Below, piece by piece: positions 1 through 56,100 of a stretch of 58,453 nt of DNA. The position numbers and the translations under genes were made by a program. Within the stretch, counting starts at the first letter, position 1. Each line of letters starts with the position of its first letter. The notes under the pieces were generated by a model, which was not told the DNA's origin, made no database searches, and worked only from the letters and a program-made list of their open reading frames with translations. This DNA comes from Macrostomum lignano (lineage: Eukaryota), in the NCBI GenBank assembly GCA_002269645.1, contig NIVC01002630.1, forward strand, positions 1-58,453, read 5' to 3'.

Positions 1-504
1 ACTATTTTATCAATCAGTCCACTTCAACTTATCTTAAAATGTGCTCTTTTCATTTATAAACACATTAACACCTCTCTAACAACTCAAGCAATGATGTCCT
101 TGAGTGTTAATTAAAAAAAACTGAAAAGCATACAAAATCCCTGTGAATAGATATTTTTACTGAATCTTGAACATGAAGTTTCTTTAGGCTTTGACCAAAG
201 AGCCTGAACTGAAATTTAGAAAGCTTAGAAATCTAATAAACACACCAGTCAATTCCAGTTAATACAGATGAAAAAATTATTAGTCTATTACTGTAATGTT
301 TGGCTACTAAAGAAAAATTTCTAAACCAATTTCAAGATTGAATCTATATACAAAATAAGCTTAAGTTTTCTACATCACAATCCCAGTGTCATTTGGCATC
401 CTGATTCCAAACTCAATATGTTAAATTGATTATAAAAATGCTAGCTACCATTGTAGAAAATTCTATAATAAAATATCAATGATATATCAATATCTACTCT
501 ATCT

Positions 505-14811: not shown

Positions 14812-15610
<799 letters not shown>

Positions 15611-26167: not shown

Positions 26168-29100
26168 CCCAGTTGTTGGAACGAGAAGGCGCTATGAGCA
26201 GCCACAAGCCTTGGATTGCTGCGGTACTGCCTGATTTTGTTGGTTTGCTGGCCTCAGCCCGGTCTCGTTTTCGCATTGAAATTCTCCCTCTATGCCCTTT
26301 CCCCCTCCCTGTCTCACTTCCTCTCGCAATCAGCTCGACAAGGACTAAGCAATAAAACCCGGCCGACCGAGCTGTAATGCGCTTAGTTAGCCGTGGCCTT
26401 GGATTTCGAATTTTTGACGCTTTTTTGGTTCGCGGGCAGTGGGGAGGCCAATCTTCGTAGATTTATTGCGACATCAGTGTGGCGAAAGAGTGTTCGGAGA
26501 AGTAGACGATAAAAATATAGCGAAAATTGGTCGTGAATTCGGTAAGGGAATTAGACTGGGCAGCTTTGACACACGAGATTTTTGGCTTCTATTAGCGTCC
26601 AAGTGGCAGTCAGCGTCACTTTGAATAACGTCTACTGTATTTAGCCACGTACTAACCGAGGCCAACTTTGCTTAACTTTCAAGTGATTCACTGAGACTCA
26701 CAGCACAGACTCAGCCAGGTGAATGTCAATAAAGTTGAGCACCACCCGCTCGTTGGGGGAGCCGATGATGTCGTAGGTGCAGTCGGTCAGCGGCAGGTAG
26801 CCGGAGCCGTCGTAACCTGGCGACTTGATGACCCCGGCCGACTGTTCTGCGCTGCTGAACCTGGTGACCCCGCAGCCGCCTGCAATGATGAGATGGGGCA
26901 TTTTAGCTTAGTGTGTTGACTGGTTCACAGAGAGAGCTGTGCATGTACAGCGGCGCTGACTTTCGCATAGTTAGGCATGTACACTCTCTGCCCTTGGGAA
27001 TGCATTCTTTTCTAGATACTCGGAAAAATTAAACCAAGGAATACTATTGCTGAAACAGTGGGAACGAACCATGACAGCTTGCCAGGTCCCCGCACTATTT
27101 AAGTAGAAACTGATGGGTTGTAGCCTCGTGGTTAAAGTGTCGGACTCACGACTTGAAGGTCGGGGGTTCGATTCTCGATCCCACTAAAACAATTTGTGTC
27201 CTTTAGCAAGACACTTAACTCTGCATTGCTTCAGTTCACCCAGCTGTAAAATGGGTGCCAGCATTAGCTGGGGTAATTGAGGATGTGTGTGGCGACCCCC
27301 CCCCAGTCCTTGGACTGAACAGCCGTACGCAGCCTTCAGATGCGCCGCGCAATAGCTGCGGCTGAGCTGTCGGTTGCACATCTGCTCATTAAGAGCAGGT
27401 GTATTCAATTATTTGATAATTTTTTATTATAAGAAACTGAATGACATCGTGACGACTTGCTGGGAGATGAGCTATTGCGCGGCGCATCTGAAGACTGCGT
27501 ACGGCTGTTCAGTCCAAGGACTGGGGGGGGGGCGCCACACACCCTCAATTACCCCAGCTAAAGCTGGCACCCATTTTACAGCTGAGTGAACTGAAGCAAT
27601 GCAGACTTAAGTGTCTTGCTCAAGGGCACAAATTATTCGAGATCGAGAATCGAACCCCCGACCTTTCAGTCGTGAGTCCGACGCTCTGACCACTAGGCTA
27701 CAACCCCTACCACTTCCAAAAATTTCACAAATCACCGGGGTCGCGCAGAAATCGATTGAGAAGAAAAACTGCGGTGCTTCCATTGTGAGGGACGAGCAAC
27801 AGACATTTTTGAAGATTTTCCTCCCACGGGGACTGGAGGCGGGGAGCAGGCAGTCGGATCGGGCGTTTCGCCACCCCCCCCCCAGTCCCCAGTCTCCGAG
27901 CACCAATTCTGTTTAACTAATGGGAATAATAAATTTTCTCCCATGCTGCAGGCCTTTGCCTCTTAGCACTTAGCACCTGATGCTCGCTTGGCTGTTGATT
28001 GCATTTTCTGGGCCGCTTCCCGCTGCCCACGTTTCAGCCGCCACTAGCAGAAATTGTTGCTCGGGCGAAGGGCGAGTATTTGCTATATATCGGGATGTAT
28101 ACATGTATATATAGGAGTAGAGTAGTTGTTAAGATGGAAATAGGAATGGAAAGGGAGAAAAAGGCGTGAGAGCAAGATAAAGCTGTGAGAGGTAGATAAA
28201 GGTGCGAGAGAGAGAGATGTAGGTATGAGATGGAGATGAAGGTGTGGGGGAGATTAATGTGAGAGTGAGATGAAAGTTAGAGGAAAATGAAGGAGTGGGA
28301 TGCAGGCGAGAGTGAGGTGAAGGTGAGAGGGAGATGCAGGCGAGAGTGAGGTGAAGGTGAGAGGGAGATGCAGGCGAGAGTGAGGTGAAGGTGGGAGGGA
28401 GATGCAGGCGAGAGTGAGGTGAAGGTGGGAGGGAGATGCAGGCGAGAGTGAAGGTGGGAGGGAGATGCAGGCGAGAGTGAGGTGAAGGTGGGAGGGAGAT
28501 GCAGGTGAGAGTGAGGTGAAGGTGGGAGGGAGATGCAGGCGAGAGTGAGGTGAAGGTGAGAGGGAGATGCAGGCGAGAGTGAGGTGAAGGTGGGAGGGAG
28601 ATGCAGGCGAGAGTGAGGTGAAGGTGGTAGGGAGATGCAGGTGAGAGTGAGGTGAAGGTGAGAGGGAGATGCAGGCGAGAGTGAGGTGAAGGTGTGAGGG
28701 AGATGCAGGTGAGAGTGAGGTGAAGGTGAGAGGGAGATGCAGGCGAGAGTGAGGTGAAGGTGGGAGGGAGATGCAGGCGAGAGTGAGGTGAAGGTGAGAG
28801 GGAGATGCAGGTGAGAGTGAGGTGAAGGTGGGAGGGAGATGCAGGTGAGAGTGAGGATAAGGAGTGAGGGAGCTACCTTTCTCTTGGAACTCATATCGAA
28901 TCCGGAAGCCATTCGAGGTCCTGTCCCGCAGCGCGCTGTAGTTGCCATACTCAGCGTAGAGCACCAGGGTGACGTTGGACAGGCCGCGGATTTCGCTGCC
29001 GGATTTATCGCCGCACAGCCTGCGCAGGTAGCTGCCCTCCACGTAGATGTCCACGAATTCCAGCTTGCAGCTGCGGTGGGCGGTTTAGCAACAGCGATGG

Positions 29101-34978: not shown

Positions 34979-35382
<404 letters not shown>

Positions 35383-35890: not shown

Positions 35891-37022
35891 TAGCTCTGCT
35901 CAATGGTGTCTGTTCTCAACACCAGCTCTGCTCGGATGGTGTCTGTTCTCAACACCAGCTCTGCTCGGATGGTGTCTGTTCTCAACACCAGCTCTGCTCG
36001 GATGGTGTCTGTTCTCAACACCAGCTCTGCTCGGATTGTGTCTGTTCTCAACATCAGCTCTGCTCAATGGTGTCTGTTCTCAACACCAGCTCTGCTCAAT
36101 GGTGTCTGTCTGTTCTCAACACCAGCTCTGCTCAGATGGTGTCTGTTCTCAACACTAGCTCTGCTCAGATGGTGTCTGTTCTCAACACCAGCTCTGCTCA
36201 GATGGTGTCTGTTCTCAACACTAGCTCTGCTCAGATGGTGTCTGTTCTCAACACCAGCTCTGCTCAATGGTGTCTGTTCTCAACACCAGCTCTGCTCGGA
36301 TTGTGTCTGTTCTCAACATCAGCTCTGCTCAATGGTGTCTGTTCTCAACACCAGCTCTGCTCAATGGTGTCTGTCTGTTCTCAACACCAGCTCTGCTCAG
36401 ATGGTGTCTGTTCTCAACACTAGCTCTGCTCAGATGGTGTCTGTTCTCAACACCAGCTCTGCTCAGATGGTGTCTGTTCTCAACACTAGCTCTGCTCAGA
36501 TGGTGTCTGTTCTCAACACCAGCTCTGCTCAGATGGTGTCTGTTCTCAACACTAGCTCTGCTCAGATGGTGTCTGTTCTCAACACCAGCTCTGCTCAGAT
36601 GGTGTCTGTTCTCAACACTAGCTCTGCTCAGATGGTGTCTGTTCTCAACACCAGCTCTGCTCGGATGGTGTCTGTTCTCAACACCAGCTCTGCTCAGATG
36701 GTGTCTGTTCTCAACACCAGCTCTGCTCGGATGGTGTCTGTTCTCAACACCAGCTCTGCTCGGATGGTGTCTGTCTGTTCTCAACACCAGCTCTGCTCGG
36801 ATGGTGTCTGTCTGTTCTCAACACCAGCTCTGCTCAGATGGTGTCTGTTCTCAACACCAGCTCTGCTCAGATGGTGTCTGTTCTCAACACCAGCTCTGCT
36901 CAGATGGTGTCTGTTCTCAACACCAGCTCTGCTCAGATGGTGTCTGTTCTCAACACCAGCTCTGCTCGGATGGTGTCTGTTCTCAACACCAGCTCTGCTC
37001 GGATGGTGTCTGTTCTCAACAG
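35891..37022. repeat. 33-bp minisatellite (CTCTGCTCAGATGGTGTCTGTTCTCAACACCAG)
   Basis: About 34 units with small indel variants. Confidence 0.97.
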
Positions 37023-38143: not shown

Positions 38144-39198
38144 TGTAAACAAACCATAACAATTAGGTAGAAGCAAACGGTAAAGTAATTTGCGCGCTAT
38201 TCTAAAAACAAAACAAAGGGTCATTAGTTCCATAGTTCCATAGATGTAGTTCCATAGAAACCTTCTCTCGAATTGAGACTTCACCATTCTCCCCAACACG
38301 TCTAACACAGACTTTAGAGGAGCTCGTTTCCACACTAGAGTGAACAAGTCTCACCTTCTCCTGAAATTTAGTCTATGGCTCAACTCTCTACCTATTAGCG
38401 CATCGGAAACAGGCTTGACCATAGACAGAATCTGCTCAACTCCAACATCCAGCCTATCTATCTCTGACATTGAGCCTGAAAATTTCCACACTGTTGCCAG
38501 GAATTTTCTTTATCCAGCTGATTTATACGAAAATCGAGTGTGGTGTCCAACTCTACTTCTGATGTCCGTGATGTGTGCACACTCGCTTTGATCTTTGAGA
38601 GAAAAGCTTGGCTGTTCCATGCTACAATTGCTACAAAAAGCAATTTCATTAAAGCATTATTCTTTTTTAAACAATTTCTGAGTGTCTGTGATTAGCGCAA
38701 CTCACTACTTATAGTAGGAAAATGAATGGAGAAAACAGACAGATGTGAATATATTTTTAACCCAGCCGATTTTCCTGTAATATTCTTTTGAAAGCTATTT
38801 TTACTTTGCTTGTGACAGGGCATGGCAAGGGAAAAACGGACGATTTAAAAAGAAGTGCATGCCCGAAATTTTGGGCCCACCGCATGCATGTCCCACAGGG
38901 TAACGCGGCACCGCAAAAACTCTTTTTTTCTTTGCAAGTCCTTCCGACTACTAGCGGCTCATGAGCAGAGCTTTTTGTTTGCTTTATTTTAAACCGACTT
39001 TTTTATTGAGAATCTTCTCTAGAGTTTGATTCAAGTTTTTATTGGTTATTCTAACACTCTATGGATACTTTTTCAAGTCAGGAAAACCGAAGGCATTCGA
39101 AACCCTTCAGCGTGAATGTTGCTGTTTGAATTGTGGTAGAGTTGCTCGCTTAATTAATAGCAAATAAATAAAGCTTAAGATCAACATTTATGGCGAAA

Positions 39199-39236
39199 AC
39201 CAACGCGTTTCAACCCACTAGGGCCGTCGTCAGGGT
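39199..39236 (-). ncRNA. Minimal type I hammerhead ribozyme motif (3' pLTR, left arm)
   Basis: ACC-CUGACGA-C-GGCCC-UAGU-GGGUU-GAAAC-GC-GUU-GGU on the minus strand. Confidence 0.7.
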
Positions 39237-39452
39237 ATATTTTATCACTGAACGAAACACTCAATATAAATAAGCAAACGATTGTACTATCTCAAGTGTC
39301 AAATTGAAAACGGGAGGGTAACCAATGTACGAAAAACATAAAAAACTAGGGGTTGGAGTTAAGCGAGAATAATGAGAGAGAGAGAGAGAGAGAGAGAAGG
39401 CAAACAGATGTAAAAAAAAACAAAATGTACGCGCAACAAAAAATAGTCAAAC

Positions 39453-41924
39453 TCAAAACACCCTAAGAAGGTGGCCCGCACCACTATGTAGCAATTGCAC
39501 ATTGAGACTGGGATTTTGAGCTTTGATGTGCAGCGCTTCAAGAATGCTAAGCTTGAATTCAGAGTTAGCACGGTCGATAATTTTAAACAATTCAATCTGT
39601 TCTCTGTCACAGCAGCCCTTGCATTCCAGAAGGTGGTCCTGGATAGCAGATTTTTTCAGCCAATGCTCCCTAACTCTGGTGTGCAGGTGTCTTTTGGTTT
39701 TTCCCACGTAAGAGATATTCTGATCTTCAGAACAACAAAATTTATAGACGACACCTGCAACCAGAGCACGAGGAACACGGGACTTGAGATTGCTGACAAA
39801 TTGACCCACCTTGGCAGTGCGAAAGACAATCCTAATCGGAGTGTTGTACCATTTCCGAAAAGATCTCTCAAGCTTCTTTTTCAACAAGATAGACGGGATA
39901 CCATAGAACGGCAAGATCATCACGGGGTCATCCGGCTTTTTACTATGATTCTGTTGCAGTCTGCCAGTAACCTTATCAGTGACAAACTTGAAAATCAACC
40001 GACTAATGAGATTTTTTGGGTATCCGTTCATACTGAAAATCCTAGTCAAATTTTTCACCTCCTCATCAAACGCAGCCCAGGAACTACACAGAGAGTAAGC
40101 TCTGTGCAGCATACAATGGATCAGGCCAATATTCCACTGTTTCGGACAGAGGGCATTGAAATTCAACAGTAAACCAGTAAACGTGGGCTTGCGATAAACC
40201 CGAGTAGAGACTTGGCCACTGCTCAGATCAACCTCAACATCGAGAAACGGAAGTTTTTTACCTCCCATCTCAACGGTGAATTGGATGTTGCTGTGGGTTG
40301 AATTCAGAGCCCGAAAAAACTCTTGGTACTTAGCCCGGTCATCAAAAATGACAAAAGTGTCATCAACATAGCGCTTGTAGAAAGTTGGCGCACACTCAAG
40401 CGACATCCACTCCGTTTCCCAGTGCGCCATGCAAACATTGGCCAGAGTAGGAGCAAGCGGGCTTCCCATGGCACAACCATCAATCTGGCGATAATATTTG
40501 TCATCAAACATGAAGATGCCAGAGGTAGCGAAGCCTAACAACTTTTTGAACACAGTCTTTGGTAACCCAGGCGGATTCATATTGTACACATGATCAGTGG
40601 CGAGATCAATAGCCAGCTTCAAAGGGACATTGGTAAAAAGCGAAGTCACGTCAAAACTGCAGAGAAAATCCTCACTTTTCGGACTGATTTGACTCAAGGC
40701 TTGAATGAACTGGCAATTAGAGTTGACGGAGAATTCCTTTGGTATGCATGGTTTGATCAGAGAATCCAAGTATCTGGCCAGTTCATACTCAGCAGTGTTA
40801 ATCATAGACACAATCGGTCTCAGCGGTTTGTCAGGTTTGTGAGCTTTGCAAAGGCCGTACAGCTGGCCAGGTTGGCTGCCATTCGGCATAATGCGCTTAA
40901 TAATCTCATTGCTAAGATGCTGCTTGGCATGGGTCCTCAAAAAAGTCTGAAGAGATCTCTCAGCCTTGAGAACAGGATGAGCCATAGTGACCTCACTCAC
41001 AGTTCCAAGACATTGAAATTTAGCCTGATCCTGCACAATGCAATTAAGCTTATTCTTGTAGTCATCACTATCCATGATAGCAACGCCGTAGCCTTTGTCA
41101 TAGCCAACAACCTTGATATTGTCATTCCCTTTAAGCTGCTTCAGCGTCTGATGAAAAAGCCTGTTCTGCTTACTAGAAATGCTGTTCTGAGCCCTAGACA
41201 CAAACTGGTCAAAATCAACAATCAAACGATTCCTAAAATTGTCATGCAAGCGGTGCGGGCCCCCATCCTGAGTACAAGAACGAGGAGTGCACTTACTAAC
41301 CAAGGTCTCAAACTCAGCAGCAATGTGAAGTTTGTTCAGTTTAGCCGGAAGAATCGGGTGTCTAAGTCCACGTTGCAGGCAGTGCTGTTCCTTGATCGTT
41401 AGCTGATGTCTTGACAAGTTGGTGATAGAATTGGGAGCCTGAAGCTTGACTTGCTTCTCAAACCAGAGTTTTTTCAGTTTTGCCTCCGTTCTTGTTTTGT
41501 CTACACTGATCCGTTGCTTAGCTGCCACAGAAACCAGGTGTCCTAGCACTGCGTAGGTTATGATGCCTAGCCTGGACTTCAGTTGCTGCTTAATGCCATG
41601 AACCTTTGATTGCAACGTCCGAAATCTCTTACGGTTGAACTGAAGTTGCTTGCGGACCAACAAACCATGAACATCAGAAACATCATCAAATAGGTGCGTG
41701 TCGGGTGTCTTGAACCTTGTGAACCGAGGAGAGAGCTCAAGTTCAACGCATTGTTCCAGGAAGATCCGATCGAGAGAGCATTTGAATAGCGAGTACGTAA
41801 TCCGCTCAAACTTGCGAAGATACGGGACGGTCACATCTTTATAGCGACAGTTGACTTCAAAGTAGAATTGTGGTAGAGTTGCTCGCTTAATTAATAGCAA
41901 ATAAATAAAGCTTAAGATCAACAT
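39453..41924 (-). CDS. Penelope-like element polyprotein: RT + thumb + GIY-YIG endonuclease, 823 aa
   Basis: Motifs YGLCKAHKPDKPLRPIVS, SFDVTSLFTNVP, QIDGCAMGSPLAP, RYVDDTF, LPFLDV, VYRKPT, VVYKFCC..SYVGKTKRHLHTRVREH, LEALHI..PSLN. Uninterrupted. The endonuclease style resembles the Naiad clade (inference). Confidence 0.96.
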   Translation of the reverse strand: MLILSFIYLLLIKRATLPQFYFEVNCRYKDVTVPYLRKFERITYSLFKCSLDRIFLEQCVELELSPRFTRFKTPDTHLFDDVSDVHGLLVRKQLQFNRKRFRTLQSKVHGIKQQLKSRLGIITYAVLGHLVSVAAKQRISVDKTRTEAKLKKLWFEKQVKLQAPNSITNLSRHQLTIKEQHCLQRGLRHPILPAKLNKLHIAAEFETLVSKCTPRSCTQDGGPHRLHDNFRNRLIVDFDQFVSRAQNSISSKQNRLFHQTLKQLKGNDNIKVVGYDKGYGVAIMDSDDYKNKLNCIVQDQAKFQCLGTVSEVTMAHPVLKAERSLQTFLRTHAKQHLSNEIIKRIMPNGSQPGQLYGLCKAHKPDKPLRPIVSMINTAEYELARYLDSLIKPCIPKEFSVNSNCQFIQALSQISPKSEDFLCSFDVTSLFTNVPLKLAIDLATDHVYNMNPPGLPKTVFKKLLGFATSGIFMFDDKYYRQIDGCAMGSPLAPTLANVCMAHWETEWMSLECAPTFYKRYVDDTFVIFDDRAKYQEFFRALNSTHSNIQFTVEMGGKKLPFLDVEVDLSSGQVSTRVYRKPTFTGLLLNFNALCPKQWNIGLIHCMLHRAYSLCSSWAAFDEEVKNLTRIFSMNGYPKNLISRLIFKFVTDKVTGRLQQNHSKKPDDPVMILPFYGIPSILLKKKLERSFRKWYNTPIRIVFRTAKVGQFVSNLKSRVPRALVAGVVYKFCCSEDQNISYVGKTKRHLHTRVREHWLKKSAIQDHLLECKGCCDREQIELFKIIDRANSEFKLSILEALHIKAQNPSLNVQLLHSGAGHLLRVF

Positions 41925-41935
41925 TTATGGCGAAA

Positions 41936-41973
41936 ACCAACGCGTTTCAACCCACTAGGGCCGTCGTCAGGGT
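41936..41973 (-). ncRNA. Minimal type I hammerhead ribozyme motif (5' pLTR, left arm)
   Basis: Same motif, just upstream of the ORF ATG at 41924. Confidence 0.7.
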
Positions 41974-42758
41974 ATATTTTATCACTGAACGAAACACTCA
42001 ATATAAATAAGCAAACGATTGTACTATCTCAAGTGTCAAATTGAAAACGGGAGGGTAACCAATGTACGAAAAACATAAAAAACTAGGGGTTGGAGTTAAG
42101 CGAGAATAATGAGAGAGAGAGAGAGAGAGAGAGAAGGCAAACAGATGTAAAAAAAAAACAAAATGTACGCGCAACAAAAAATAGTCAAACTCAAAACACC
42201 CTAAGAAGGTGGCCCGCACCACTATGTAGCAATTGCACATTGAGACTGGGATTTTGAGCTTTGATGTGCAGCGCTTCAAGAATGCTAAGCTTGAATTCAG
42301 AGTTAGCACGGTCGATAATTTTAAACATATTTTGAGCTTTGATGTGCAGCGCTTCAAGAATGCTAAGCTTGAATTCAGAGTTACAGATTTAGAGAACAGA
42401 TTGAATTGTTTAAAATTATCGACCGTGCTAACTCTGAATTCAAGCTTAGCATTCTTGAAGCGCTGCACATCAAAGCTCAAAATCCCAGTCTCAATGTGCA
42501 ATTGCTACATAGTGGTGCGGGCCACCTTCTTAGGGTGTTTTGAGTTTGACTATTTTTTGTTGCGCGTACATTTTGTTTTTTTTTACATCTGTTTGCCTTC
42601 TCTCTCTCTCTCTCTCTCTCTCATTATTCTCGCTTAACTCCAACCCTAGTTTTTTATGTTTTTCGTACATTGGTTACCCTCCCGTTTTCAATTTGACACT
42701 TGAGATAGTACAATCGTTTGCTTATTTATATTGAGTGTTTCGTTCAGTGATAAAATAT

Positions 42759-42796
42759 ACCCTGACGACGGCCCTAGTGGGTTGAAACGCGTTGGT
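42759..42796 (+). ncRNA. Minimal type I hammerhead ribozyme motif (5' pLTR, right arm)
   Basis: CTGACGA 42762-42768, stem II GGCCC/GGGTT, GAAAC 42784-42788, GTT triplet 42791-42793, stem I ACC/GGT. Confidence 0.7.
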
Positions 42797-42807
42797 TTTC
42801 GCCATAA

Positions 42808-45279
42808 ATGTTGATCTTAAGCTTTATTTATTTGCTATTAATTAAGCGAGCAACTCTACCACAATTCTACTTTGAAGTCAACTGTCGCTATAAAGATGTG
42901 ACCGTCCCGTATCTTCGCAAGTTTGAGCGGATTACGTACTCGCTATTCAAATGCTCTCTCGATCGGATCTTCCTGGAACAATGCGTTGAACTTGAGCTCT
43001 CTCCTCGGTTCACAAGGTTCAAGACACCCGACACGCACCTATTTGATGATGTTTCTGATGTTCATGGTTTGTTGGTCCGCAAGCAACTTCAGTTCAACCG
43101 TAAGAGATTTCGGACGTTGCAATCAAAGGTTCATGGCATTAAGCAGCAACTGAAGTCCAGGCTAGGCATCATAACCTACGCAGTGCTAGGACACCTGGTT
43201 TCTGTGGCAGCTAAGCAACGGATCAGTGTAGACAAAACAAGAACGGAGGCAAAACTGAAAAAACTCTGGTTTGAGAAGCAAGTCAAGCTTCAGGCTCCCA
43301 ATTCTATCACCAACTTGTCAAGACATCAGCTAACGATCAAGGAACAGCACTGCCTGCAACGTGGACTTAGACACCCGATTCTTCCGGCTAAACTGAACAA
43401 ACTTCACATTGCTGCTGAGTTTGAGACCTTGGTTAGTAAGTGCACTCCTCGTTCTTGTACTCAGGATGGGGGCCCGCACCGCTTGCATGACAATTTTAGG
43501 AATCGTTTGATTGTTGATTTTGACCAGTTTGTGTCTAGGGCTCAGAACAGCATTTCTAGTAAGCAGAACAGGCTTTTTCATCAGACGCTGAAGCAGCTTA
43601 AAGGGAATGACAATATCAAGGTTGTTGGCTATGACAAAGGCTACGGCGTTGCTATCATGGATAGTGATGACTACAAGAATAAGCTTAATTGCATTGTGCA
43701 GGATCAGGCTAAATTTCAATGTCTTGGAACTGTGAGTGAGGTCACTATGGCTCATCCTGTTCTCAAGGCTGAGAGATCTCTTCAGACTTTTTTGAGGACC
43801 CATGCCAAGCAGCATCTTAGCAATGAGATTATTAAGCGCATTATGCCGAATGGCAGCCAACCTGGCCAGCTGTACGGCCTTTGCAAAGCTCACAAACCTG
43901 ACAAACCGCTGAGACCGATTGTGTCTATGATTAACACTGCTGAGTATGAACTGGCCAGATACTTGGATTCTCTGATCAAACCATGCATACCAAAGGAATT
44001 CTCCGTCAACTCTAATTGCCAGTTCATTCAAGCCTTGAGTCAAATCAGTCCGAAAAGTGAGGATTTTCTCTGCAGTTTTGACGTGACTTCGCTTTTTACC
44101 AATGTCCCTTTGAAGCTGGCTATTGATCTCGCCACTGATCATGTGTACAATATGAATCCGCCTGGGTTACCAAAGACTGTGTTCAAAAAGTTGTTAGGCT
44201 TCGCTACCTCTGGCATCTTCATGTTTGATGACAAATATTATCGCCAGATTGATGGTTGTGCCATGGGAAGCCCGCTTGCTCCTACTCTGGCCAATGTTTG
44301 CATGGCGCACTGGGAAACGGAGTGGATGTCGCTTGAGTGTGCGCCAACTTTCTACAAGCGCTATGTTGATGACACTTTTGTCATTTTTGATGACCGGGCT
44401 AAGTACCAAGAGTTTTTTCGGGCTCTGAATTCAACCCACAGCAACATCCAATTCACCGTTGAGATGGGAGGTAAAAAACTTCCGTTTCTCGATGTTGAGG
44501 TTGATCTGAGCAGTGGCCAAGTCTCTACTCGGGTTTATCGCAAGCCCACGTTTACTGGTTTACTGTTGAATTTCAATGCCCTCTGTCCGAAACAGTGGAA
44601 TATTGGCCTGATCCATTGTATGCTGCACAGAGCTTACTCTCTGTGTAGTTCCTGGGCTGCGTTTGATGAGGAGGTGAAAAATTTGACTAGGATTTTCAGT
44701 ATGAACGGATACCCAAAAAATCTCATTAGTCGGTTGATTTTCAAGTTTGTCACTGATAAGGTTACTGGCAGACTGCAACAGAATCATAGTAAAAAGCCGG
44801 ATGACCCCGTGATGATCTTGCCGTTCTATGGTATCCCGTCTATCTTGTTGAAAAAGAAGCTTGAGAGATCTTTTCGGAAATGGTACAACACTCCGATTAG
44901 GATTGTCTTTCGCACTGCCAAGGTGGGTCAATTTGTCAGCAATCTCAAGTCCCGTGTTCCTCGTGCTCTGGTTGCAGGTGTCGTCTATAAATTTTGTTGT
45001 TCTGAAGATCAGAATATCTCTTACGTGGGAAAAACCAAAAGACACCTGCACACCAGAGTTAGGGAGCATTGGCTGAAAAAATCTGCTATCCAGGACCACC
45101 TTCTGGAATGCAAGGGCTGCTGTGACAGAGAACAGATTGAATTGTTTAAAATTATCGACCGTGCTAACTCTGAATTCAAGCTTAGCATTCTTGAAGCGCT
45201 GCACATCAAAGCTCAAAATCCCAGTCTCAATGTGCAATTGCTACATAGTGGTGCGGGCCACCTTCTTAGGGTGTTTTGA
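42808..45279 (+). CDS. Penelope-like element polyprotein: RT + thumb + GIY-YIG endonuclease, 823 aa
   Basis: Translation identical to the 39453-41924 copy in the supplied ORF track; same motifs. Confidence 0.96.
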   Translation: MLILSFIYLLLIKRATLPQFYFEVNCRYKDVTVPYLRKFERITYSLFKCSLDRIFLEQCVELELSPRFTRFKTPDTHLFDDVSDVHGLLVRKQLQFNRKRFRTLQSKVHGIKQQLKSRLGIITYAVLGHLVSVAAKQRISVDKTRTEAKLKKLWFEKQVKLQAPNSITNLSRHQLTIKEQHCLQRGLRHPILPAKLNKLHIAAEFETLVSKCTPRSCTQDGGPHRLHDNFRNRLIVDFDQFVSRAQNSISSKQNRLFHQTLKQLKGNDNIKVVGYDKGYGVAIMDSDDYKNKLNCIVQDQAKFQCLGTVSEVTMAHPVLKAERSLQTFLRTHAKQHLSNEIIKRIMPNGSQPGQLYGLCKAHKPDKPLRPIVSMINTAEYELARYLDSLIKPCIPKEFSVNSNCQFIQALSQISPKSEDFLCSFDVTSLFTNVPLKLAIDLATDHVYNMNPPGLPKTVFKKLLGFATSGIFMFDDKYYRQIDGCAMGSPLAPTLANVCMAHWETEWMSLECAPTFYKRYVDDTFVIFDDRAKYQEFFRALNSTHSNIQFTVEMGGKKLPFLDVEVDLSSGQVSTRVYRKPTFTGLLLNFNALCPKQWNIGLIHCMLHRAYSLCSSWAAFDEEVKNLTRIFSMNGYPKNLISRLIFKFVTDKVTGRLQQNHSKKPDDPVMILPFYGIPSILLKKKLERSFRKWYNTPIRIVFRTAKVGQFVSNLKSRVPRALVAGVVYKFCCSEDQNISYVGKTKRHLHTRVREHWLKKSAIQDHLLECKGCCDREQIELFKIIDRANSEFKLSILEALHIKAQNPSLNVQLLHSGAGHLLRVF

Positions 45280-45496
45280 GTTTGACTATTTTTTGTTGCG
45301 CGTACATTTTGTTTTTTTTTTACATCTGTTTGCCTTCTCTCTCTCTCTCTCTCTCTCTCATTATTCTCGCTTAACTCCAACCCCTAGTTTTTTATGTTTT
45401 TCGTACATTGGTTACCCTCCCGTTTTCAATTTGACACTTGAGATAGTACAATCGTTTGCTTATTTATATTGAGTGTTTCGTTCAGTGATAAAATAT

Positions 45497-45534
45497 ACCC
45501 TGACGACGGCCCTAGTGGGTTGAAACGCGTTGGT
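45497..45534 (+). ncRNA. Minimal type I hammerhead ribozyme motif (3' pLTR, right arm)
   Basis: CTGACGA 45500-45506, GAAAC 45522-45526, GTT 45529-45531. Confidence 0.7.
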
Positions 45535-46883
45535 TTTCGCCATAAATGTTGATCTTAAGCTTTATTTAGTTGCTGTTTGATGTTAAAAGCAGCCTGATTT
45601 CCTGCCTTAGGTGCAGTGGAGTAGAATTTCATTCATTTGCACGTCACCCAGCTGTCAACCCGTTCGAACAATTCATGCAGGAATTTCGTTCGAGCAGAGT
45701 TTTCAATTTTTTTCAGCTAATTTTTAGAGCTTGAGATTCGATCTTGACCAGGAGGAACTGCGGTGGCGAATCAATCAACACAGAAGCTGGCATGTCCTGA
45801 CCGCTCTAAATGGCTGTCTGGCCCACCACTCTGTTCTCAATAAAGCCAGCTCAAACTGAGCCGTGTTAAAGTGACCTCGCTTGGCTGAGCGCCCGGGCCC
45901 ACCTCCTACTGCTTGTGAAGAAATGCCCCCCCCCAACCTCCAAAAAACAACCCCCATCCCCCCGGCGACTTCCCCGCTGATTCTGTCGCGCTTCCTTCTT
46001 CGTCTTCTTCATTCTATTCTTTACTTACATGACGGCGGCGGTGGCAGCGGTGACGGCGGCAGCAGCAGCTTGCTGATGGGGGGGGGGGTCGCCCAGGCGC
46101 GTCGCAGGGACGGCTCAGACCTACCGAGGCGCCGGAAGTGGCGCTTTTCATGCGCGCACAGAGGCCGACGAGGTCGGCGGGGTCCCTCCCGGTGAGCCGT
46201 CGCCTCTGGGGTGGGGCGCTTGTCAGTGGCTGGCAGTCTGGCTGTGCGTGTGTGTGTGTGTGTCACTGCCGCCCCCACACCAGCTTGAAGACTGCAGGTG
46301 CCCCAAAGGAAGAGGAGAGACAGATTTCCAGAGCTGTGTGCGCAGGGTGCGCCTTGGTGCTAGCAGTTGTAGGAGCAAACAGGGCCAGCTGCCGCGTGAT
46401 GCAGCTGGGGGGGGGGGGTACAGAGGGAAATTGCAGGGGAAGTTGACCTCGCCCGACTGGCAAGGAAGAAGAAAGAGGCAAGCTTGAAAGAGTCCGGGGG
46501 GTTGAGCATTGTGCCCGTGTCGAGACCCCTGTCGCCCCTCGCTGCGCTGGAAAATGTTGAAATAACCGACGAGATTTTCAGCAGCGCAAATTTACCGTGC
46601 ATGTCGTTTTTGGGGGTAAAGAGGGAGAGCAGGCGCGGGCCAGAGATAGAAGCACTTCCATTGGACAGCCCTGTCATGCACTGAGTCCGCAGTTCGCGTC
46701 CATTCAGCTTGGCTGTAAGAATTTTCTCACTAGCTACCTATATAGTTTGACTTCTCTTCCATCAATTTCATCCATTATTCTGATTCTCGGCCAAATCTGC
46801 TAGTATATAAACTGGCTGGGAACTCGGTTTGACTTCAGTCCTCCTGCCAGGCCACTCAGTCACTTTCCTCGCAGCTGTTTGGC

Positions 46884-51026
<4,143 letters not shown>

Positions 51027-51487
51027 ACTAAAGAAAGCTCAGTCGCGTAAGTTTTATAGCTTGATTGACTCAATGTTTGACTTCACCAATAAACAAAGCT
51101 TCAGAATAGTCAATGTTTTCATTCGTTTGAAAAGCCTATGCAAAAATCTATATTTAGCCAATCAATCTAAACAGTTTTTGCTTTATTTCTACTGATAGAA
51201 TCCTGTCAGTTAACTAAATGTAATATAAATTCTTTGTTACATTTAGTTTTACTTTTTACCTTGTTGGTTCATGTGGCTTTGTAAATTTTTCTCATTGCAA
51301 TATTAGGGCATCTTATGATGACGTTCGTAACTTATAGAACAGTTTTGACTCATGACTCCAACTCATCCTGCAAAAAATCGATTATTGGATAAAGACATTC
51401 TTGCGATTTTTCATTAGATGATATGCACTCTTGGACTCGTAGTTTGCTTGCGTTCAGCCCACTTCTAATAGTCTGTAACAGTTCATA

Positions 51488-51750
51488 AAACTGCAGTAGT
51501 TTGTGCATCAAAACTGCAGTAGTTTGTGTATCAAAACTGCAGTAGTTTGTGTATCAAAACTGCAGTAGTTTGTGCATCAAAACTGCAGTAGTTTGTGCAT
51601 CAAAACTGCAGTAGTTTGTGTATCAAAACTGCAGTAGTTTATGCATCAAAACTGCAGTAGTTTGTGTATCAAAACTGCAGTAGTTTGTGTATCAAAACTG
51701 CAGTAGTTTATGCATCAAAACTGCAGTGGTTTGTGCATCAAAACTGCAGT
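51488..51750. repeat. 23-bp tandem repeat (CAAAACTGCAGTAGTTTGTGYAT) with an internal inverted repeat
   Basis: About 11 units between the convergent BAMBI and MICAL-like 3' ends. Confidence 0.94.
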
Positions 51751-52393
51751 TAGCTAAAATCTTACTAAACCAAGACCCAAAAGAAGTTACGCTTGAGGTT
51801 TCATACTTCCACAAAATAATACTCATGGAAAAAATTCATATAGATGTTTCTGCCTATTCTATATTGTTAAGAACCTCTCTGCTTTCGTTGCTCAAAAAAA
51901 TAATATTTTCGATTATTAAATCAACTGGAGAACTCATCCAGCTTGTACATGAGTTTCTATTTTGTTTAAACTTGAACGTTTGGATTAGAAATTTTCGAAA
52001 TTTTTAAATAATAAGACCAATGTTTAGTCAACACTGGCTGTTACGTATAAAATAGAGCTTCATATTTTGAAGTGCAGTTTAATTTCTTTCTGAATATTTT
52101 TTCTCATTTGCTAATGTTGTGCCTATTTCATATTTTCGTTAAAAAATTATAAAACGCTTCAACATATGCACAGTTATCAAATTTTATTTGATCAGAAACA
52201 GGATTTTAATGAGTTGCAATGTTTTTTACATTTTTATTGGCAAGAATCTGGTTTATTTCACATATTTTTACAGTAGGTATTTGCAGCTAATAGAATTTCA
52301 AAGAAAATACACTTGATTTCATCATGTCTCGATAGGGTGAAAGAGTGCACGCTAGTGAGCGAGTGAATTCATTTAATGAGTTCAAAAGTTGAT

Positions 52394-52800
52394 GAGTTCA
52401 CGAGTTCACGAGTTCACGAGTTCACGAGTTCACGAGTTCACGAGTTCATGAGTTCACGAGTTCACGAGTTCACGAGTTCACGAGTTCACGAGTTCACGAG
52501 TTCATGAGTTCACGAGTTCACGAGTTCTTGAGTTCACGAGTTCACGAGTTCACGAGTTCTTGAGTTCACGAGTTCACGAGTTCATGAGTTCACGAGTTCA
52601 CGAGTTCACGAGTTCACGAGTTCATGAGTTCACGAGTTCACGAGTTCTTGAGTTCACGAGTTCACGAGTTCACGAGTTCTTGAGTTCACGAGTCCATGAG
52701 TTCACGAGTTCACGAGTTCACGAGTTCATGAGTTCACGAGTTCACGAGTTCACGAGTTCACGAGTTCATGAGTTCACAAGTTTATGAGCTCATGAGTTCG
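52394..52800. repeat. 8-bp tandem repeat (GAGTTCAC)n
   Basis: Read directly; variants GAGTTCAT and GAGTTCTT. Confidence 0.96.
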
Positions 52801-53106
52801 TAAGCTTATGAGTAAGATAATGAGCTTGAGTCTATAGTTGATTATTGCATGAGTTAATAATGACTATATGACTCCATGAGGGAGTGAGTCAGGGCGGGTA
52901 AGTGGATCAGGGGTGGGTGAGTGGGTGAGTAAGCCGAATTTTCCCAGGAGGTAGAGAAGCGTTGAATGTGACCAAGTCAGAAATAGCAGCCACAGAAGCA
53001 GCAGTTTATTGCAATGGGATTTCTAAAACGCTTGGAAAGACGCTATACATTAAAATCATATAGTGACAATGAATGTTTGATTTAGTATATGTTCGAATCG
53101 CGCATC

Positions 53107-56100
53107 TCATTTTCCATTTTTAGATTTTGTGCCCTTCTGCTTTTTCTCTTTCTTCTGCTTCTTCTCTTTTTGCTTCTTCTTCTTGTCCTCTTTCGCGCCG
53201 CTCTCCGCCGCCTCAGTTGGAGAACGCAGGCGCTGAAGCTTCTCAGCCAGGGCCGCGGCCAGCTCCGCCTCCGCTTCGGCCTCCTCCTGCTCGGACTCGT
53301 GTATGAGCTCCGTGATGAGGGCTCGCCTGTCCACCACCGACTTCAATTCGGCCAGCAGCTGCTTTTCGTTCAGCCTGTCCTGGTCGTTTCGCTGCTGGTC
53401 TGAAAGGGGTGGCAGACCATTTTTTAGACTCTTGCGAGCCCCGAAGCAACAGGCTCTGTACATGCTTGACAACGAGAAAGTCAAGGCAGCTGTACAACAA
53501 CCGACTTTTTTAGGTGCCATTAAATTAACACGCAACACGCGGCGTTTGTCAAAGCATTGAATTGGCAAGAAGCAAAGATTAGCAGTACTTTTAAAAGAAA
53601 ATTTCTCACCTGACTTGGAGAGGGAGACGCGCAGGTCAAATTCGATTACCGAGTGCCGCAGCTCGAGTTCCCGCTCCTCAGAGCTGAGGGAGGTCGCCGG
53701 GGGGATCGTGAAGAGAAATGCGAAAAGACAAAGAAAACATTACTTTACATGACTAGATGTTATAATACACCTCAAACTGGATCAACTGCAGGTTGAAGCG
53801 GGTTTTTCTGATCTGTTTTGCACTTGGAATAAGTGCTGCATATTGTACTTTTCTAATGTGAAGTAGAAAGCATGAAACTGAGAGCTACGCACCGTCGTAG
53901 CAAGTACATTTCCTTGCGGCAGAGCTGGTTGCGCTCATTGACTAGGCTGATCCAATCGGCAAGAAGTCGCTTCTCCTCGGCGGGGTTCTGCGTCTCGGCT
54001 AAAGAAAAAGGCGGGAAAATTTCGACTAAAAATGAAACAGTATGAGTCAGAACACCAGATGAAACTCACCTGTTTTAAGCAGCTCATACAGATCTCTGCC
54101 TCGCTGCTCAACTTCCACCTGGAGTCGATTGATGCCGGCTAGTTCCCGTTCGATGTCTTCGTAGGCTTCGAACTCGTCCGGAGCCTCGGTGCGGATCACT
54201 CGGCGACCCTCTGGGCTCGCGTCGGGGCCAACCGTCTCAGCGTCGCTCAGAACAGGCGGTGGAGTCGGTGGAGGAGTTGACGGACGCTGGCGAGCCTGAA
54301 TTCGCAGTGAAGGACCAACTGGTGCGCCAGGCTGAGCCTGTTTCTTTGAGAACAATGGCGATGGTGACTCCACGTGATCTACTGAATGTTTTGCCTGAGG
54401 CTGCTTCGTTTGCCTGAGCTGCGATGGAGGCTCGGATTCAGTTTTGGATGAGGCTTGGGACTGCGATGACGATTTAAGCTGATGCTGGGACAGAAGCTGT
54501 ATCGGAGGTCCTGGAGTATCCTGTCTTTGCGTCAAATTTATTGGAGTAAATTTTTGCGATGGTTGAATCAACCGCTCTCCATGAAAACTTTCCTGTCCAT
54601 GCTTGTCGGTTTTTCTCAAGCTTAAATGCTGTGAAAGAGGCTGGGACTGAGAACTGGATGGCGTTGACAGGCCTTGGCTCTCAGTCTTTACCGTTTGAAT
54701 AGTCTGCGACGTCGGCTGCAACTGTGCTAGCGAGTTCGGCTGTAATGGTTTGTCCGCTTTTGTATCTTTGAAGCACGAAGGCTGCGTGTCGACGCTTTTT
54801 GAGTACAGTTGTGATTTAGAGTCAGGCTTGAGATGTGATTGTTGCTGCTCTGCGTTCAGTCCGCTGGTTGGTAATTTTTGAGTCAACAATTGAGATGAGG
54901 GAGCTGTGTGGGGCCTTGAGTAATTGCTCGCTGTCTGTGTTTTTTGACCCAACGACTGCGACGGTGGTTGTTTTGATGAGCATGAAGTTTTCGTGAGGGA
55001 ATGCGACTGCGGCCTATGCTTTCCTGCATCTGCGGACGGCTGGCTTGAAGATTGCAACGGTTGCGGCTTTAACCAAGAAGACTGTGCTGATGGTTGTGAC
55101 GAAGGCTGTGGCTTCTCCAGCGGCGGGACTTTCGATTCTATGGGGTTCGAAGCAGACACGGACGTTGAAGATAAAGGTGTTGGCTTCAGAATTTCCATCG
55201 CTGATGGTCCCGACGGCTTTGAGTGCGCCGACTGGCGAATCGGTTCAGGTGCGAACTTGGACTGCGGTTGTGGAACTAACCGGATGTTCGGATTTGCTAC
55301 CTTCTCCTGCTCATCCGCCAGCTGTCGATCACGCGGCGACAAAGATGGTGATTCTGGAAGCGTGTGCAGAGCTGGCGGCAGAGGCGACACCGAGCGAGGC
55401 CGTGATGGAGCAGACGCCTTAGAAACTGGACTTGTAAGCGTCTGTAACATTGGTGGCGGCTTCGGCGACACCAAAACTGGAGGCGGAAGCACTGGAGCTG
55501 CCGTCTTTGCCGGAGGCTCCTCTGTTCCGGTTGACTCCTCTTCCAGTTTCCTGCGTCTGTAGGCCACCGAAGCCCGGTGCAACGATTGCCGGCGGTCTTC
55601 CAAGTGGCACTGTCGGTGATATAGTTTTCCGGCTTCGATATGGCGCTCTAGGAAGAAGACCGGATCGCCGCACTGAGCACAAACGGCGGCTGGTCGCTGG
55701 GGTGAACGTCGTGGAGAATTGCCACGGGTTGATGAAGGGGATGCTGCCGGCCTCGTTTTTACTGGCATTGTAGCTGCGGCTGTTACCTCTGTAGGTACTT
55801 TTAGCGGTTTCGCTGCCGGTGACTTCTTGATCGACGCTGTCACTTGCGCTTCTGTTGGTGGCTTTGCGGGTGCTGCTGGTGATACAACTGCCGCTGCGGC
55901 TGGCCGGCCGTTTGCAAATAAATTCACATCAGGACCACCGGCTGAGGGCAAAACGAACGTTGGAGGATTATAATTAGCATGCAGTCTTTATACTTTTTGA
56001 TACTTACTCCTCTTTGGGATTGGAGTTCTTACCTTTCTCCTTCCCCTGCAGGTTGAGATTATAGTAGGTGACATAGGTAATAATGCTAAGCTTCTCCGGC

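What the first reader, a model, noticed from the sequence alone, without database searches (positions are those of the whole stretch)
39118..45580. Head-to-head inverted dimer of two complete Penelope-like elements inside one 12-bp TSD
Seen: arms of 3198 bp (-) and 3178 bp (+), each pLTR-ORF-pLTR with the same intact 823-aa protein, separated by 63 bp. GTTGCTGTTTGA occurs as a direct repeat at 39118-39129 and 45569-45580. Both outer ends are element 3' ends with different tail lengths (58-60 vs 23 nt). Established: PLEs often show inverted pLTRs or partial tandems, and L1 twin priming gives 5' inversions from one RNA. Inference: both strands of one staggered cut primed more-than-unit-length reverse transcription, from two RNAs or from a multimeric or circular template, and the cDNAs were joined 5' to 5'. 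Unique flanks, the TSD, unequal tails and non-mirrored T-tract lengths (9/10/9/10) argue against a hairpin-read assembly artefact.
Basis: partly seen in the sequence, partly recalled or inferred. Interest (0 to 1): 0.88.

Follow-up and report, generated by a model that had tools for sequence, protein, structure and literature searches.

The report
Head-to-head double Penelope retrotransposon insertion
Two complete, virtually identical copies of a Penelope-like retrotransposon sit head-to-head inside one 12-bp target duplication in what looks like a flatworm genome; this is an unusually complete example of an insertion architecture already known for this class, not a new kind of element.

Summary
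Arms 39130-42327 (-) and 42391-45568 (+) are each pLTR-ORF-pLTR (about 1.16 units of 2737 bp) and encode the same intact 823-aa RT + GIY-YIG protein. They differ by three homopolymer indels and no substitutions. A 63-bp filler separates them, and GTTGCTGTTTGA flanks the whole structure. Both outer ends are element 3' ends, at ORF +23 and ORF +58/60. The 35-37 nt difference is the published PLE "tail". A minimal hammerhead motif sits in all four pLTRs.

Head-to-head arms with one tail and one TSD are the canonical PLE architecture (Craig 2021; Arkhipova 2013; Schostak 2008). A purified PLE protein cleaves and extends both target strands in vitro (Frangieh 2024). Two distant relatives fetched here (L003, L005) show the same layout, with 12-13 bp TSDs and one tailed end, but their inverted arms are truncated.

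What is unusual is only that both arms are full length. Their 5' ends lie 16 nt apart. Together with the arm lengths, this favours two separate full-length RNAs copied from the two nicks over one multimeric or circular template, simple snap-back, or L1-type twin priming. Assembly over-expansion cannot be excluded without reads. Verdict: new member of a known kind, modest interest.

The parts
39118..39129 (.). Left copy of the target-site duplication GTTGCTGTTTGA. The last 2 nt (GA) are ambiguous with element sequence.
39130..42327 (-). Left arm: a complete PLE copy (5' pLTR - ORF - 3' pLTR, about 1.16 units). Its 5' end is at the centre (ORF nt 2336 of the upstream partial unit). Its 3' end is at ORF +58..60.
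39130..39164 (-). 'Tail': the 35-37 nt (ORF +24 to +58/60) carried by the left arm's outer end but absent from the right arm's outer end.
   Evidence: literature
39128..39605 (-). Left arm, outer (3') pLTR. It covers the last 153 nt of the ORF, 265 nt of UTR and the first 58-60 nt of the ORF. Tracts: A9, G4, (GA)12.
39453..41924 (-). Left ORF, 823 aa: N-terminal region, DKG motif, RT (YVDD), C-terminal GIY-YIG endonuclease with CCHH.
41865..42327 (-). Left arm, inner (5') pLTR, starting at ORF nt 2336. Tracts: A10, G4.
42328..42390 (.). 63-bp centre filler: t (42328) + a 55-nt third copy of ORF nt 2358-2412 in left-arm orientation (42329-42383) + cagattt (42384-42390). Positions 42383-42389 (acagatt) repeat ORF nt 2325-2331.
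42391..45568 (+). Right arm: a complete PLE copy, with its 5' end at ORF nt 2320 of the upstream partial unit and its 3' end at ORF +23 (no tail).
42391..42830 (+). Right arm, inner (5') pLTR. Tracts: T9, C3.
42808..45279 (+). Right ORF, 823 aa, identical to the left ORF.
45127..45568 (+). Right arm, outer (3') pLTR. Tracts: T10, C4.
45569..45580 (.). Right copy of the TSD GTTGCTGTTTGA. It matches the element's own next 12 nt (TTTGCTATTAAT) at 7 of 12 positions.
42762..42793 (+). Minimal type-I hammerhead motif in the pLTR: CTGACGA - bulged C - helix II GGCCC/GGGTT (loop TAGT) - GAAA - CGCG - TT|. ACGCGT is a palindrome that would form helix III in a dimer. The predicted cut lies 14 nt upstream of the ATG.
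   Evidence: descriptor hits only the four pLTRs; 0.005 expected per random 58 kb; PMC4209133
45500..45531 (+). Same hammerhead motif, right outer pLTR.
41939..41970 (-). Same hammerhead motif, left inner pLTR.
39202..39233 (-). Same hammerhead motif, left outer pLTR.

Best explanation
This is the product of one retrotransposition event of an active, canonical (C-terminal GIY-YIG) Penelope-like element.

Proposed steps:
1. The element's endonuclease nicked the two target strands 10-12 nt apart. Each nick lies 3' of the 12-mer on its own strand.
2. Each free 3'-OH primed reverse transcription at one of the element's two internal start sites near the beginning of the ORF: ORF +58/60 on the top strand and ORF +23 on the bottom strand.
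3. Each cDNA ran to the 5' end of its own full-length pLTR-ORF-pLTR RNA, reaching ORF nt 2336 and 2320 of the upstream partial unit.
4. The two cDNA 3' ends were then joined at the centre by template jumps or end joining. This left a 63-bp filler: 1 untemplated nt, a re-copied 55-nt piece and 7 more nt.
5. Fill-in of the 12-nt stagger gave the TSD.

Shown by the sequence: the anatomy, the single TSD, the identity of the arms, the intact protein and the conserved termini.

Inferred: the order of events, the use of two separate RNA molecules, and that nt 2320-2336 marks the RNA 5' end (transcription start).

Consequence: two divergently oriented, apparently functional transcription units. The locus forms a 3.2-kb perfect palindrome, so read-through from outside would give long double-stranded RNA.
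For: - Anatomy, single TSD and the chance estimate for the TSD.
- Protein: RVT_1 plus GIY-YIG. It aligns end to end with relatives, with DKG, YVDD, GIY/YVG with two Cys between them, and H, R, H, E, N all conserved.
- Minimal hammerhead in every pLTR, as described for PLEs (PMC4209133).
[quoted passage not shown] Pen2a_Av has an inverted pLTR, a 31-bp tail and a 9-bp TSD (PMC3846280).
- Published biochemistry: the PAc protein cleaves and extends both strands, and its two RT start sites delimit the tail (PMC11167929).
- Comparative evidence obtained here: L003 has a 13-bp TSD with arms ending at ORF +65 (tailed) and +26. L005 has a 12-bp TSD with arms ending at +39 and +65 (tailed).
- The tailed terminus falls 1-5 nt after the conserved L-P-K/Q codons in the window, L001, L003 and L005. 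The outer ends are therefore canonical start sites and not random breaks.
- Two RNAs: both arms are 1.16 units long and their 5' ends are 16 nt apart. For independent random stops in a 2737-nt unit the chance of this is about 33/2737 = 1.2%.
- The right arm holds 16 nt (ORF 2320-2335) that the inner end of the left arm lacks. It therefore cannot simply be a copy of the left arm.
Against: - No reads are available, so the physical existence of both full arms is not verified.
- No empty allele and no other copy of this family could be found: the exact protein is not on record, the closest proteins are 41% identical, and the metagenome scan gave only one distant hit. The family-wide 5' boundary and termini therefore could not be measured.
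- Nothing marks nt 2320-2336 as a transcription start. This rests on analogy with Penelope's internal promoter, as quoted.
- The centre filler needs at least two extra jumps.
- Palindrome centres are prone to secondary rearrangement, so the 16-nt asymmetry and the 55-nt block could be later events.
- Arm identity could partly reflect arm-to-arm gene conversion rather than youth.
Confidence: 0.6

Rival explanations
1. Assembly over-expansion. The real locus is the common PLE form 'inverted pLTR + pLTR-ORF-pLTR' inside the TSD. The assembler walked from the inverted pLTR into a second, non-existent inverted ORF, because the pLTR is a repeat that also borders the ORF.
For: The common form has exactly this outline with a short inverted arm (L003 and L005). 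PLE tandem/inverted structures are known to cause assembly problems (PMC8557442; PMC3846280). The only differences between the arms are homopolymer lengths, which are typical consensus noise.
Against: The window resolves more than 25 minisatellite arrays of up to 1.1 kb without gaps or Ns. This points to long reads, which would span a 6.4-kb structure. The four pLTRs carry three distinct tract combinations, whereas copies built from the same reads should polish to the same consensus.
Confidence: 0.12
2. One cDNA plus snap-back (self-priming). Only one nick primed reverse transcription. The cDNA 3' end then folded back on a short palindrome and copied itself, giving the second arm, which was joined to the other target end by end joining. 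The centre was later remodelled.
For: Self-priming was proposed for PLE inverted junctions with palindromes (PMC3846280). It would explain directly why the two 5' ends nearly coincide. The inner pLTR contains natural palindromes (AAGCTT, GAATTC, TTTAAA) near the junction. The right outer junction shows partial homology to the target, 7 of 12.
Against: - The right arm has 16 nt at its inner end that the left arm's inner end lacks.
- The T and C tracts differ between the arms at three places.
- The right arm stops at ORF +23 instead of running to +58/60 and into the flank. A tail-less end at +26 or +39 recurs in relatives, which fits an independent initiation better than a chance end-joining point.
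Confidence: 0.13
3. One long template. A multimeric read-through RNA or a circular (hammerhead-processed, ligated) RNA served both primers or supported rolling-circle reverse transcription. Alternatively, a pre-existing palindromic dimer was transcribed and copied as one unit.
For: PLE loci are transcribed as multi-copy RNAs (PMC11167929). Hammerhead-bearing retrozymes related to PLE pLTRs are thought to use circular RNAs. Each arm is longer than one unit.
Against: - With one multimeric RNA, the downstream cDNA should end at the upstream start site (1.0 unit) or at the RNA 5' end (2.16 units). Both arms are 1.16 units.
- Rolling-circle copying gives no reason for both cDNAs to stop within 16 nt of each other (about 1.2% by chance).
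- Each arm contains two uncut hammerhead sites.
- The RT start sites lie 37 and 72-74 nt downstream of the predicted hammerhead cut, so a unit-length processed linear RNA could not template the arms.
- For copying of a whole dimer from one RNA, the 5' end of that cDNA would have to coincide with a canonical 3' terminus.
Confidence: 0.1
4. Two independent insertions, the second landing exactly at the 5' junction of the first.
For: PLE endonucleases are reported to recognise and cut their own sequence, which favours insertion next to existing copies (PMC11167929).
Against: Neither arm has its own TSD, and the only flanking duplication brackets the whole structure. The arms have no substitutions between them. 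Both outer ends are 3' ends, so the first insertion would have had no TSD partner at its 5' side.
Confidence: 0.03

Closest known systems
Canonical EN+ Penelope-like elements with inverted pLTR architecture (for example Pen2a_Av of Adineta vaga, PMC3846280; the D. virilis Penelope form with large inverted terminal repeats, PMC2377424; general scheme in PMC8557442 fig. 2)
   Same: - Single ORF with RT plus a C-terminal GIY-YIG/CCHH endonuclease.
- pLTRs formed by a partial tandem; the pLTR includes the first codons of the ORF.
- Minimal hammerhead in the pLTR.
- Head-to-head inverted copy at the 5' side.
- A 30-40 nt tail at only one outer end.
- One short TSD (9-13 bp) around the whole structure.
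   Different: In the published typical form, and in relatives L003 and L005, the inverted arm is 5'-truncated (about 180-460 bp). Here it is a second complete pLTR-ORF-pLTR copy with an intact ORF. The protein is only about 41% identical to the nearest database sequences.
PAc (Poseidon of Anolis carolinensis) in vitro TPRT, Frangieh et al. 2024 (PMC11167929)
   Same: It provides the mechanism that fits: cleavage and extension of both target strands, a predicted protein dimer, and reverse transcription starting at two adjacent internal sites in the first part of the ORF that delimit the tail. Unprocessed RNA (hammerhead uncut) is used as template.
   Different: - The PAc start sites lie at about ORF +80 to +118 in an AC-rich stem-loop. 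Here they are at +23 and +58/60, and no stable fold is predicted.
- In PAc the hammerhead cut is 26 nt inside the ORF. Here it is 14 nt upstream of the ATG.
- In vitro there was no strand bias in start site. Here and in L003 and L005 the two ends always differ.
L1 twin priming (Ostertag and Kazazian 2001; from my own knowledge)
   Same: The same nick geometry applies: the second-strand 3'-OH also primes on RNA, giving an inverted 5' part inside one TSD.
   Different: Twin priming uses one RNA. The second primer anneals at a random internal site by microhomology, and the two segments are non-overlapping parts of one template. Here both arms start at the element's canonical 3' start sites and each contains the whole unit.
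Mu killer-type inverted duplications of transposons (from my own knowledge)
   Same: A long perfect inverted duplication of an active element that could give hairpin RNA if transcribed through.
   Different: No evidence here for read-through transcription or small RNAs. The two units are oriented divergently from the centre.

Membership tests
Penelope-like elements, canonical C-terminal EN+ (Penelope/Poseidon-type) | Single ORF with a PLE-type reverse transcriptase, including the DKG motif upstream of the core RT | tested here: met
   Pfam RVT_1, E = 1.6e-10. D276-K277-G278 and Y519-V-D-D522 are invariant in the alignment with 7 relatives. DKG is named as diagnostic in PMC8557442.
Penelope-like elements, canonical C-terminal EN+ (Penelope/Poseidon-type) | C-terminal GIY-YIG endonuclease with the CCHH motif (two Cys between GIY and YIG) and catalytic R, H, E, N | tested here: met
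   The Pfam GIY-YIG hit at residues 724-804 is weak: E = 4.5e-4, 20.9 bits, just below the 22.6-bit cut-off. VYKFCCSEDQNISYVGKT has C730/C731 between the motifs. H746, R750, H754, E796 and N808 are invariant. Definition in PMC8557442.
Penelope-like elements, canonical C-terminal EN+ (Penelope/Poseidon-type) | No CX2-5CxxC zinc-finger linker upstream of the EN (this separates Penelope/Poseidon from Neptune and Nematis) | tested here: met
   There is no cysteine in the roughly 60 residues before the GIY motif; criterion from PMC8557442. No phylogeny with named reference elements was made, so clade placement rests on this one character.
Penelope-like elements, canonical C-terminal EN+ (Penelope/Poseidon-type) | pLTRs formed by a partial tandem (a 5'-truncated upstream unit before the full unit) | tested here: met
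   Direct repeats of 442-479 bp at 2737-2738 bp spacing in both arms.
Penelope-like elements, canonical C-terminal EN+ (Penelope/Poseidon-type) | Hammerhead ribozyme motif in the pLTR | tested here: inconclusive
   A descriptor for the minimal type-I HHR hits only the four pLTRs, on the sense strand, with 0.005 hits expected per random 58 kb. The descriptor requires the CUGANGA and GAAA cores, a helix II of at least 4 bp with an optional 5' bulge, a short helix III and a helix I of at least 3 bp. The hits also show a palindromic ACGCGU at the helix III position, which was read by eye and not required by the descriptor. The features match PMC4209133. However, Rfam models gave no hammerhead hit at E <= 1, and cleavage was not tested.
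Penelope-like elements, canonical C-terminal EN+ (Penelope/Poseidon-type) | Optional 30-40 nt 'tail' at one outer end, and a short TSD of variable length | tested here: met
   Tail of 35-37 nt on the left arm only; TSD of 10-12 bp. The same is seen in L003 (39 nt; 13 bp) and L005 (26 nt; 12 bp).
L1-type twin priming product | Inverted and direct segments are non-overlapping parts of one template, and the second priming site is internal and arbitrary | tested here: not met
   Both arms contain the whole unit and both begin at canonical 3' termini conserved in relatives.
Fold-back (hairpin-read) assembly artefact | Everything distal to the turn-around point, flanks included, is mirrored | tested here: not met
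   The flanks are unique and not reverse complements of each other. A direct 12-bp TSD is present. The outer ends are unequal, and the centre is asymmetric by 16 nt.
Rolling-circle or circular-RNA templated insertion (retrozyme-like) | Head-to-tail multimers with arbitrary end points, and a template processed at hammerhead sites | tested here: inconclusive
   The arms exceed one unit, but both stop within 16 nt of each other and contain uncut hammerhead sites. No RNA data are available.

The most novel reading that the evidence does not exclude
PLE integration may be a concerted, two-template reaction. A dimeric RNP would carry two full-length RNAs, possibly held together through the palindromic helix III of the dimeric minimal hammerhead, and would copy one RNA from each nick. 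As a rule, one end would start at the fixed protein-directed site (the tailed end). The other would start where the target primer can partly pair with the tail region (the tail-less end). Under this reading, the common 'inverted truncated copy' is an aborted version of this full dimer.

Support here is thin. All three head-to-head insertions examined have one tailed and one tail-less end. The targets at the tail-less ends match the tail at 19 of 36 positions (19 of 20000 random draws reach this).
Probability: 0.2. Interest if true: 0.6.

Novelty: new member of a known kind. Interest (0 to 1): 0.3.

Why it matters
How PLEs integrate is still unsettled. [quoted passage not shown] A young insertion in which both arms are complete is a natural experiment with both junctions, both termini and the centre unblurred by decay. 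It shows that the second strand's cDNA can be as long as the first. It also shows that both cDNAs start at canonical sites, and that the two templates most likely had the same 5' end. That supports the two-strand extension seen in vitro in 2024 and argues against some self-priming and single-template models. It does not reveal a new kind of element. On the practical side, it marks an apparently active PLE family in a flatworm-like genome, and a locus that could produce hairpin RNA against that family.

Tried and rejected
- Rfam scan of 38500-46200 at E <= 1 gave no hammerhead. The only hits were sub-threshold miRNA-precursor models at 42292-42477, which merely reflect the hairpin potential of the palindrome centre (DNA fold -109 kcal/mol). 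I rejected these as genes.
- Exact-protein look-up found nothing on record. The protein search found nothing above 48% identity over partial alignments (41% for full-length matches). The metagenome locus scan gave one distant fragment (34% identity). No same-family copy or empty site could therefore be obtained, and the planned family survey of termini and centre junctions was not possible.
- Folding the ORF 5' region as RNA gave no structure better than shuffles (z = +1.18). The AC-rich stem-loop reported for PAc start sites is not evident here.
- Evgen'ev 1997 and Pyatkov 2004 could not be read because they are not held. Statements about them are taken second-hand from PMC2377424 and PMC11167929.
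- Searches for 'Penelope-like' with 'twin priming' or 'cryo-EM' found no newer mechanistic study.
- Independent double insertion was considered and rejected (no separate TSDs). So was a fold-back read artefact (flanks not mirrored).
- A promoter scan was not run, because the available tool models only bacterial sigma-70 sites.
Full report
**1. What is there**

The region 39118-45580 is a near-perfect 6.4-kb palindrome made of two copies of one retroelement.
- The repeat finder gives a 2677-nt, 100% complementary inverted repeat, plus direct repeats spaced 2737-2738 bp within each arm.
- Each arm carries the same 823-aa ORF: 39453-41924 on the minus strand and 42808-45279 on the plus strand.
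- A global alignment of the arms shows no substitutions and three one-base indels, all in homopolymers.
- Read in element orientation, each arm is a 5'-truncated upstream unit (the 5' pLTR), then the full ORF, then the 3' pLTR, about 1.16 units in all.
- The four pLTRs have T tracts of 9/10/9/10, C tracts of 4/4/3/4 and an identical (TC)12.
- The left arm runs 39130-42327 (39128 if the ambiguous GA is counted) and the right arm 42391-45568.
- No other copy or fragment of the element is in the window, and the flanks are unique.

**2. The ends**

GTTGCTGTTTGA occurs only twice in the window, directly abutting the two outer ends. In about 2990 random boundary pairs with +-6 nt slop, none had a flanking repeat of 10 bp or more.

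Both outer ends are element 3' ends.
- The right arm stops at ORF +23.
- The left arm stops at ORF +58, or +60 if the 2-nt overlap with the TSD is counted.
- The extra 35-37 nt (39130-39164) is what the PLE literature calls the tail. [quoted passage not shown] It is 31 bp in Pen2a_Av, whose pLTR likewise includes the first 12 (22 with tail) codons of the ORF (PMC3846280).

**3. The centre**

The inner ends are ORF nt 2336 (left arm) and 2320 (right arm) of the upstream partial unit, so they lie 16 nt apart.

The 63-bp filler has three parts:
- one t;
- a 55-nt third copy of ORF nt 2358-2412 in the polarity of the left arm;
- cagattt, of which acagatt repeats ORF nt 2325-2331.

Short untemplated additions and re-copied pieces are what serial template jumps or end joining at cDNA 3' ends would leave. 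That reading is inference. The sub-threshold Rfam miRNA hits here only reflect the hairpin potential of the centre.

**4. What the element is**

- The protein has RVT_1 and a weak GIY-YIG match.
- It aligns end to end with its nearest relatives, which are unnamed metagenome proteins at 35-42% identity over full-length alignments.
- DKG, YVDD, the GIY/YVG core with two cysteines between, and the H, R, H, E, N residues are all conserved.
- It has no CX2-5CxxC linker. By the criteria quoted from PMC8557442 this is the Penelope/Poseidon type of EN.
- A descriptor for the minimal type-I hammerhead hits only the four pLTRs, on the sense strand. About 0.005 hits are expected per random window. The hits have a bulged base 5' of helix II, a short helix I and a palindromic ACGCGU in place of helix III, as described in PMC4209133.
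- The Rfam hammerhead models did not score it, so I call the motif present but unproven.
- The predicted cut lies 14 nt upstream of the ATG. Both RT start sites therefore lie downstream of it, and each arm contains two uncut sites.

**5. Host and context**

An exon-like ORF at 7608-7907 (-) is troponin I. Its best match is Hymenolepis diminuta at 63% identity, and a further hit is Trichobilharzia. The host is therefore probably a flatworm not represented in the protein collection. The window is otherwise dominated by more than 25 unrelated minisatellite arrays. These are resolved without Ns, which suggests a long-read assembly.

**6. Comparison with relatives fetched here**

I read eight loci encoding relatives.
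- L001, L006, L007 and L008 show direct pLTRs or tandems.
- L002 starts inside an inverted junction.
- L003 has a 13-bp TSD (TATGTACCAATAG, 7430-7442 and 9591-9603). It encloses an inverted 458-bp arm ending at ORF +65 and a direct 1.7-kb arm ending at ORF +26.
- L005 has a 12-bp TSD (AGACTCAACCTA). It encloses an inverted arm of about 300 bp ending at +39 and a direct arm ending at +65.

The tailed terminus lies 1-5 nt after the conserved Leu-Pro-Lys/Gln codons in the window, L001, L003 and L005. The window's outer ends are therefore canonical termini of this lineage. The architecture is recurrent. Only the completeness of the inverted arm is special to the window.

**7. Mechanism**

The TSD geometry puts a 3'-OH at each side pointing inwards, and each arm's antisense strand is continuous with one of these primers. 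The simplest reading is target-primed reverse transcription on both strands. A purified PLE protein does exactly this in vitro, starting at two adjacent internal sites that correspond to the tail (PMC11167929).

Three features of the window's dimer narrow the template question.
- *Arm length.* Both arms are 1.16 units. A single multimeric RNA used by both primers predicts 1.0 or 2.16 units for the downstream cDNA.
- *Coinciding 5' ends.* The 5' ends are 16 nt apart. This has about a 1.2% chance for independent random stops, as expected on a circle. It fits two full-length RNAs with one transcription start, in line with Penelope's internal promoter downstream of the start site (PMC8557442).
- *Asymmetry.* The right arm has 16 nt that the left arm's inner end lacks, the arms differ in three tracts, and the right arm ends at a recurrent tail-less position. 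All of these argue against simple snap-back copying, which is the self-priming idea of PMC3846280.

None of this is proof. Centre remodelling, slippage and gene conversion are possible.

**8. What cannot be excluded**

The main technical rival is that the assembler expanded a real 'inverted pLTR + pLTR-ORF-pLTR' locus into two full arms. Only reads can settle this. No empty site or second family member could be retrieved.

**9. Novelty and score**

Every component has been published:
- the head-to-head arrangement;
- pLTRs;
- a tail at one end;
- a single TSD;
- the hammerhead motif;
- extension of both target strands.

The window adds a new, apparently active family and an unusually complete, undecayed example that is useful for discriminating between models. 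I rate it a new member of a known kind, with interest 0.3.

**10. Side observation**

All three head-to-head insertions examined have exactly one tailed end. At the tail-less ends, the first 12 nt of target match the element's own tail at 7, 6 and 6 positions (19 of 36). Only 19 of 20000 random draws reach this. Two tailed ends give 5 and 2 of 12.

This could mean that the tail-less end is set by partial pairing of the target primer with the template. It could instead mean that the endonuclease prefers tail-like targets. With n = 3 it is a lead only.

Noticed in passing
window 45569-45580; L003 9591-9602; L005 5375-5386: At the tail-less outer end of each of three head-to-head PLE insertions, the target (TSD) matches the first 12 nt of the element's own tail at 7, 6 and 6 positions (19 of 36). 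Only 19 of 20000 random draws reach this. Two tailed ends with a known continuation give 5 and 2 of 12. All three insertions have exactly one tailed end.
   Followed up: partly
L003 7430-9603 and L005 5375-7831 (ENA ERZ25070167, long-read contigs): Two distant relatives (44-45% protein identity over partial alignments) show the same layout as the window: head-to-head arms inside one 13-bp or 12-bp TSD, with one tailed end. Their inverted arms are only about 460 and 300 bp.
   Followed up: yes
window 7608-7907 (-): Exon-like ORF encoding a troponin I segment (...EKYDWEMKI...GKFTKPVLKKVSK...). The best database match is Hymenolepis diminuta troponin I at 63% identity, and a Trichobilharzia hit follows. 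This suggests a flatworm host that is absent from the protein collection.
   Followed up: partly
window 7100-37100 and 47000-58200: More than 25 unrelated minisatellite or microsatellite arrays of 0.3-1.1 kb are packed a few hundred bp apart. Examples are a 33-mer x34 at 35892-37021, a 17-mer x60 at 23646-24661, (TCTG)200 at 14813-15610 and (TGTC)100 at 34980-35382. They produce strong local GC and AT skews, for example at 28-32 kb.
   Followed up: no
window 17054-17382, 27115-27707, 47650-47903: A dispersed repeat of about 250-330 bp (89-96% identity) is present three or four times, twice as an inverted pair at 27.1-27.7 kb. It is probably a small non-autonomous element.
   Followed up: no
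window 1-7000: A low-GC block (25-39% GC) contrasts with about 45-60% GC in the rest of the window.
   Followed up: no
window 42292-42477: Rfam miRNA-precursor models (MIR2606, MIR8706, mir-75, mir-240, MIR408) give sub-threshold hits centred on the palindrome junction. They are caused by the long hairpin potential and are not miRNA genes.
   Followed up: yes
window 39374-39397, 42111-42134, 42599-42622, 45336-45359: Each pLTR carries a (TC)12/(GA)12 microsatellite next to an A9-10 tract. The microsatellite length is identical in all four copies, while the homopolymers vary.
   Followed up: partly
L006 3160-4713 (-): Next to a PLE relative lies an ORF with a weak Exo_endo_phos (AP-endonuclease) match. 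It is probably a LINE inserted beside the PLE.
   Followed up: no
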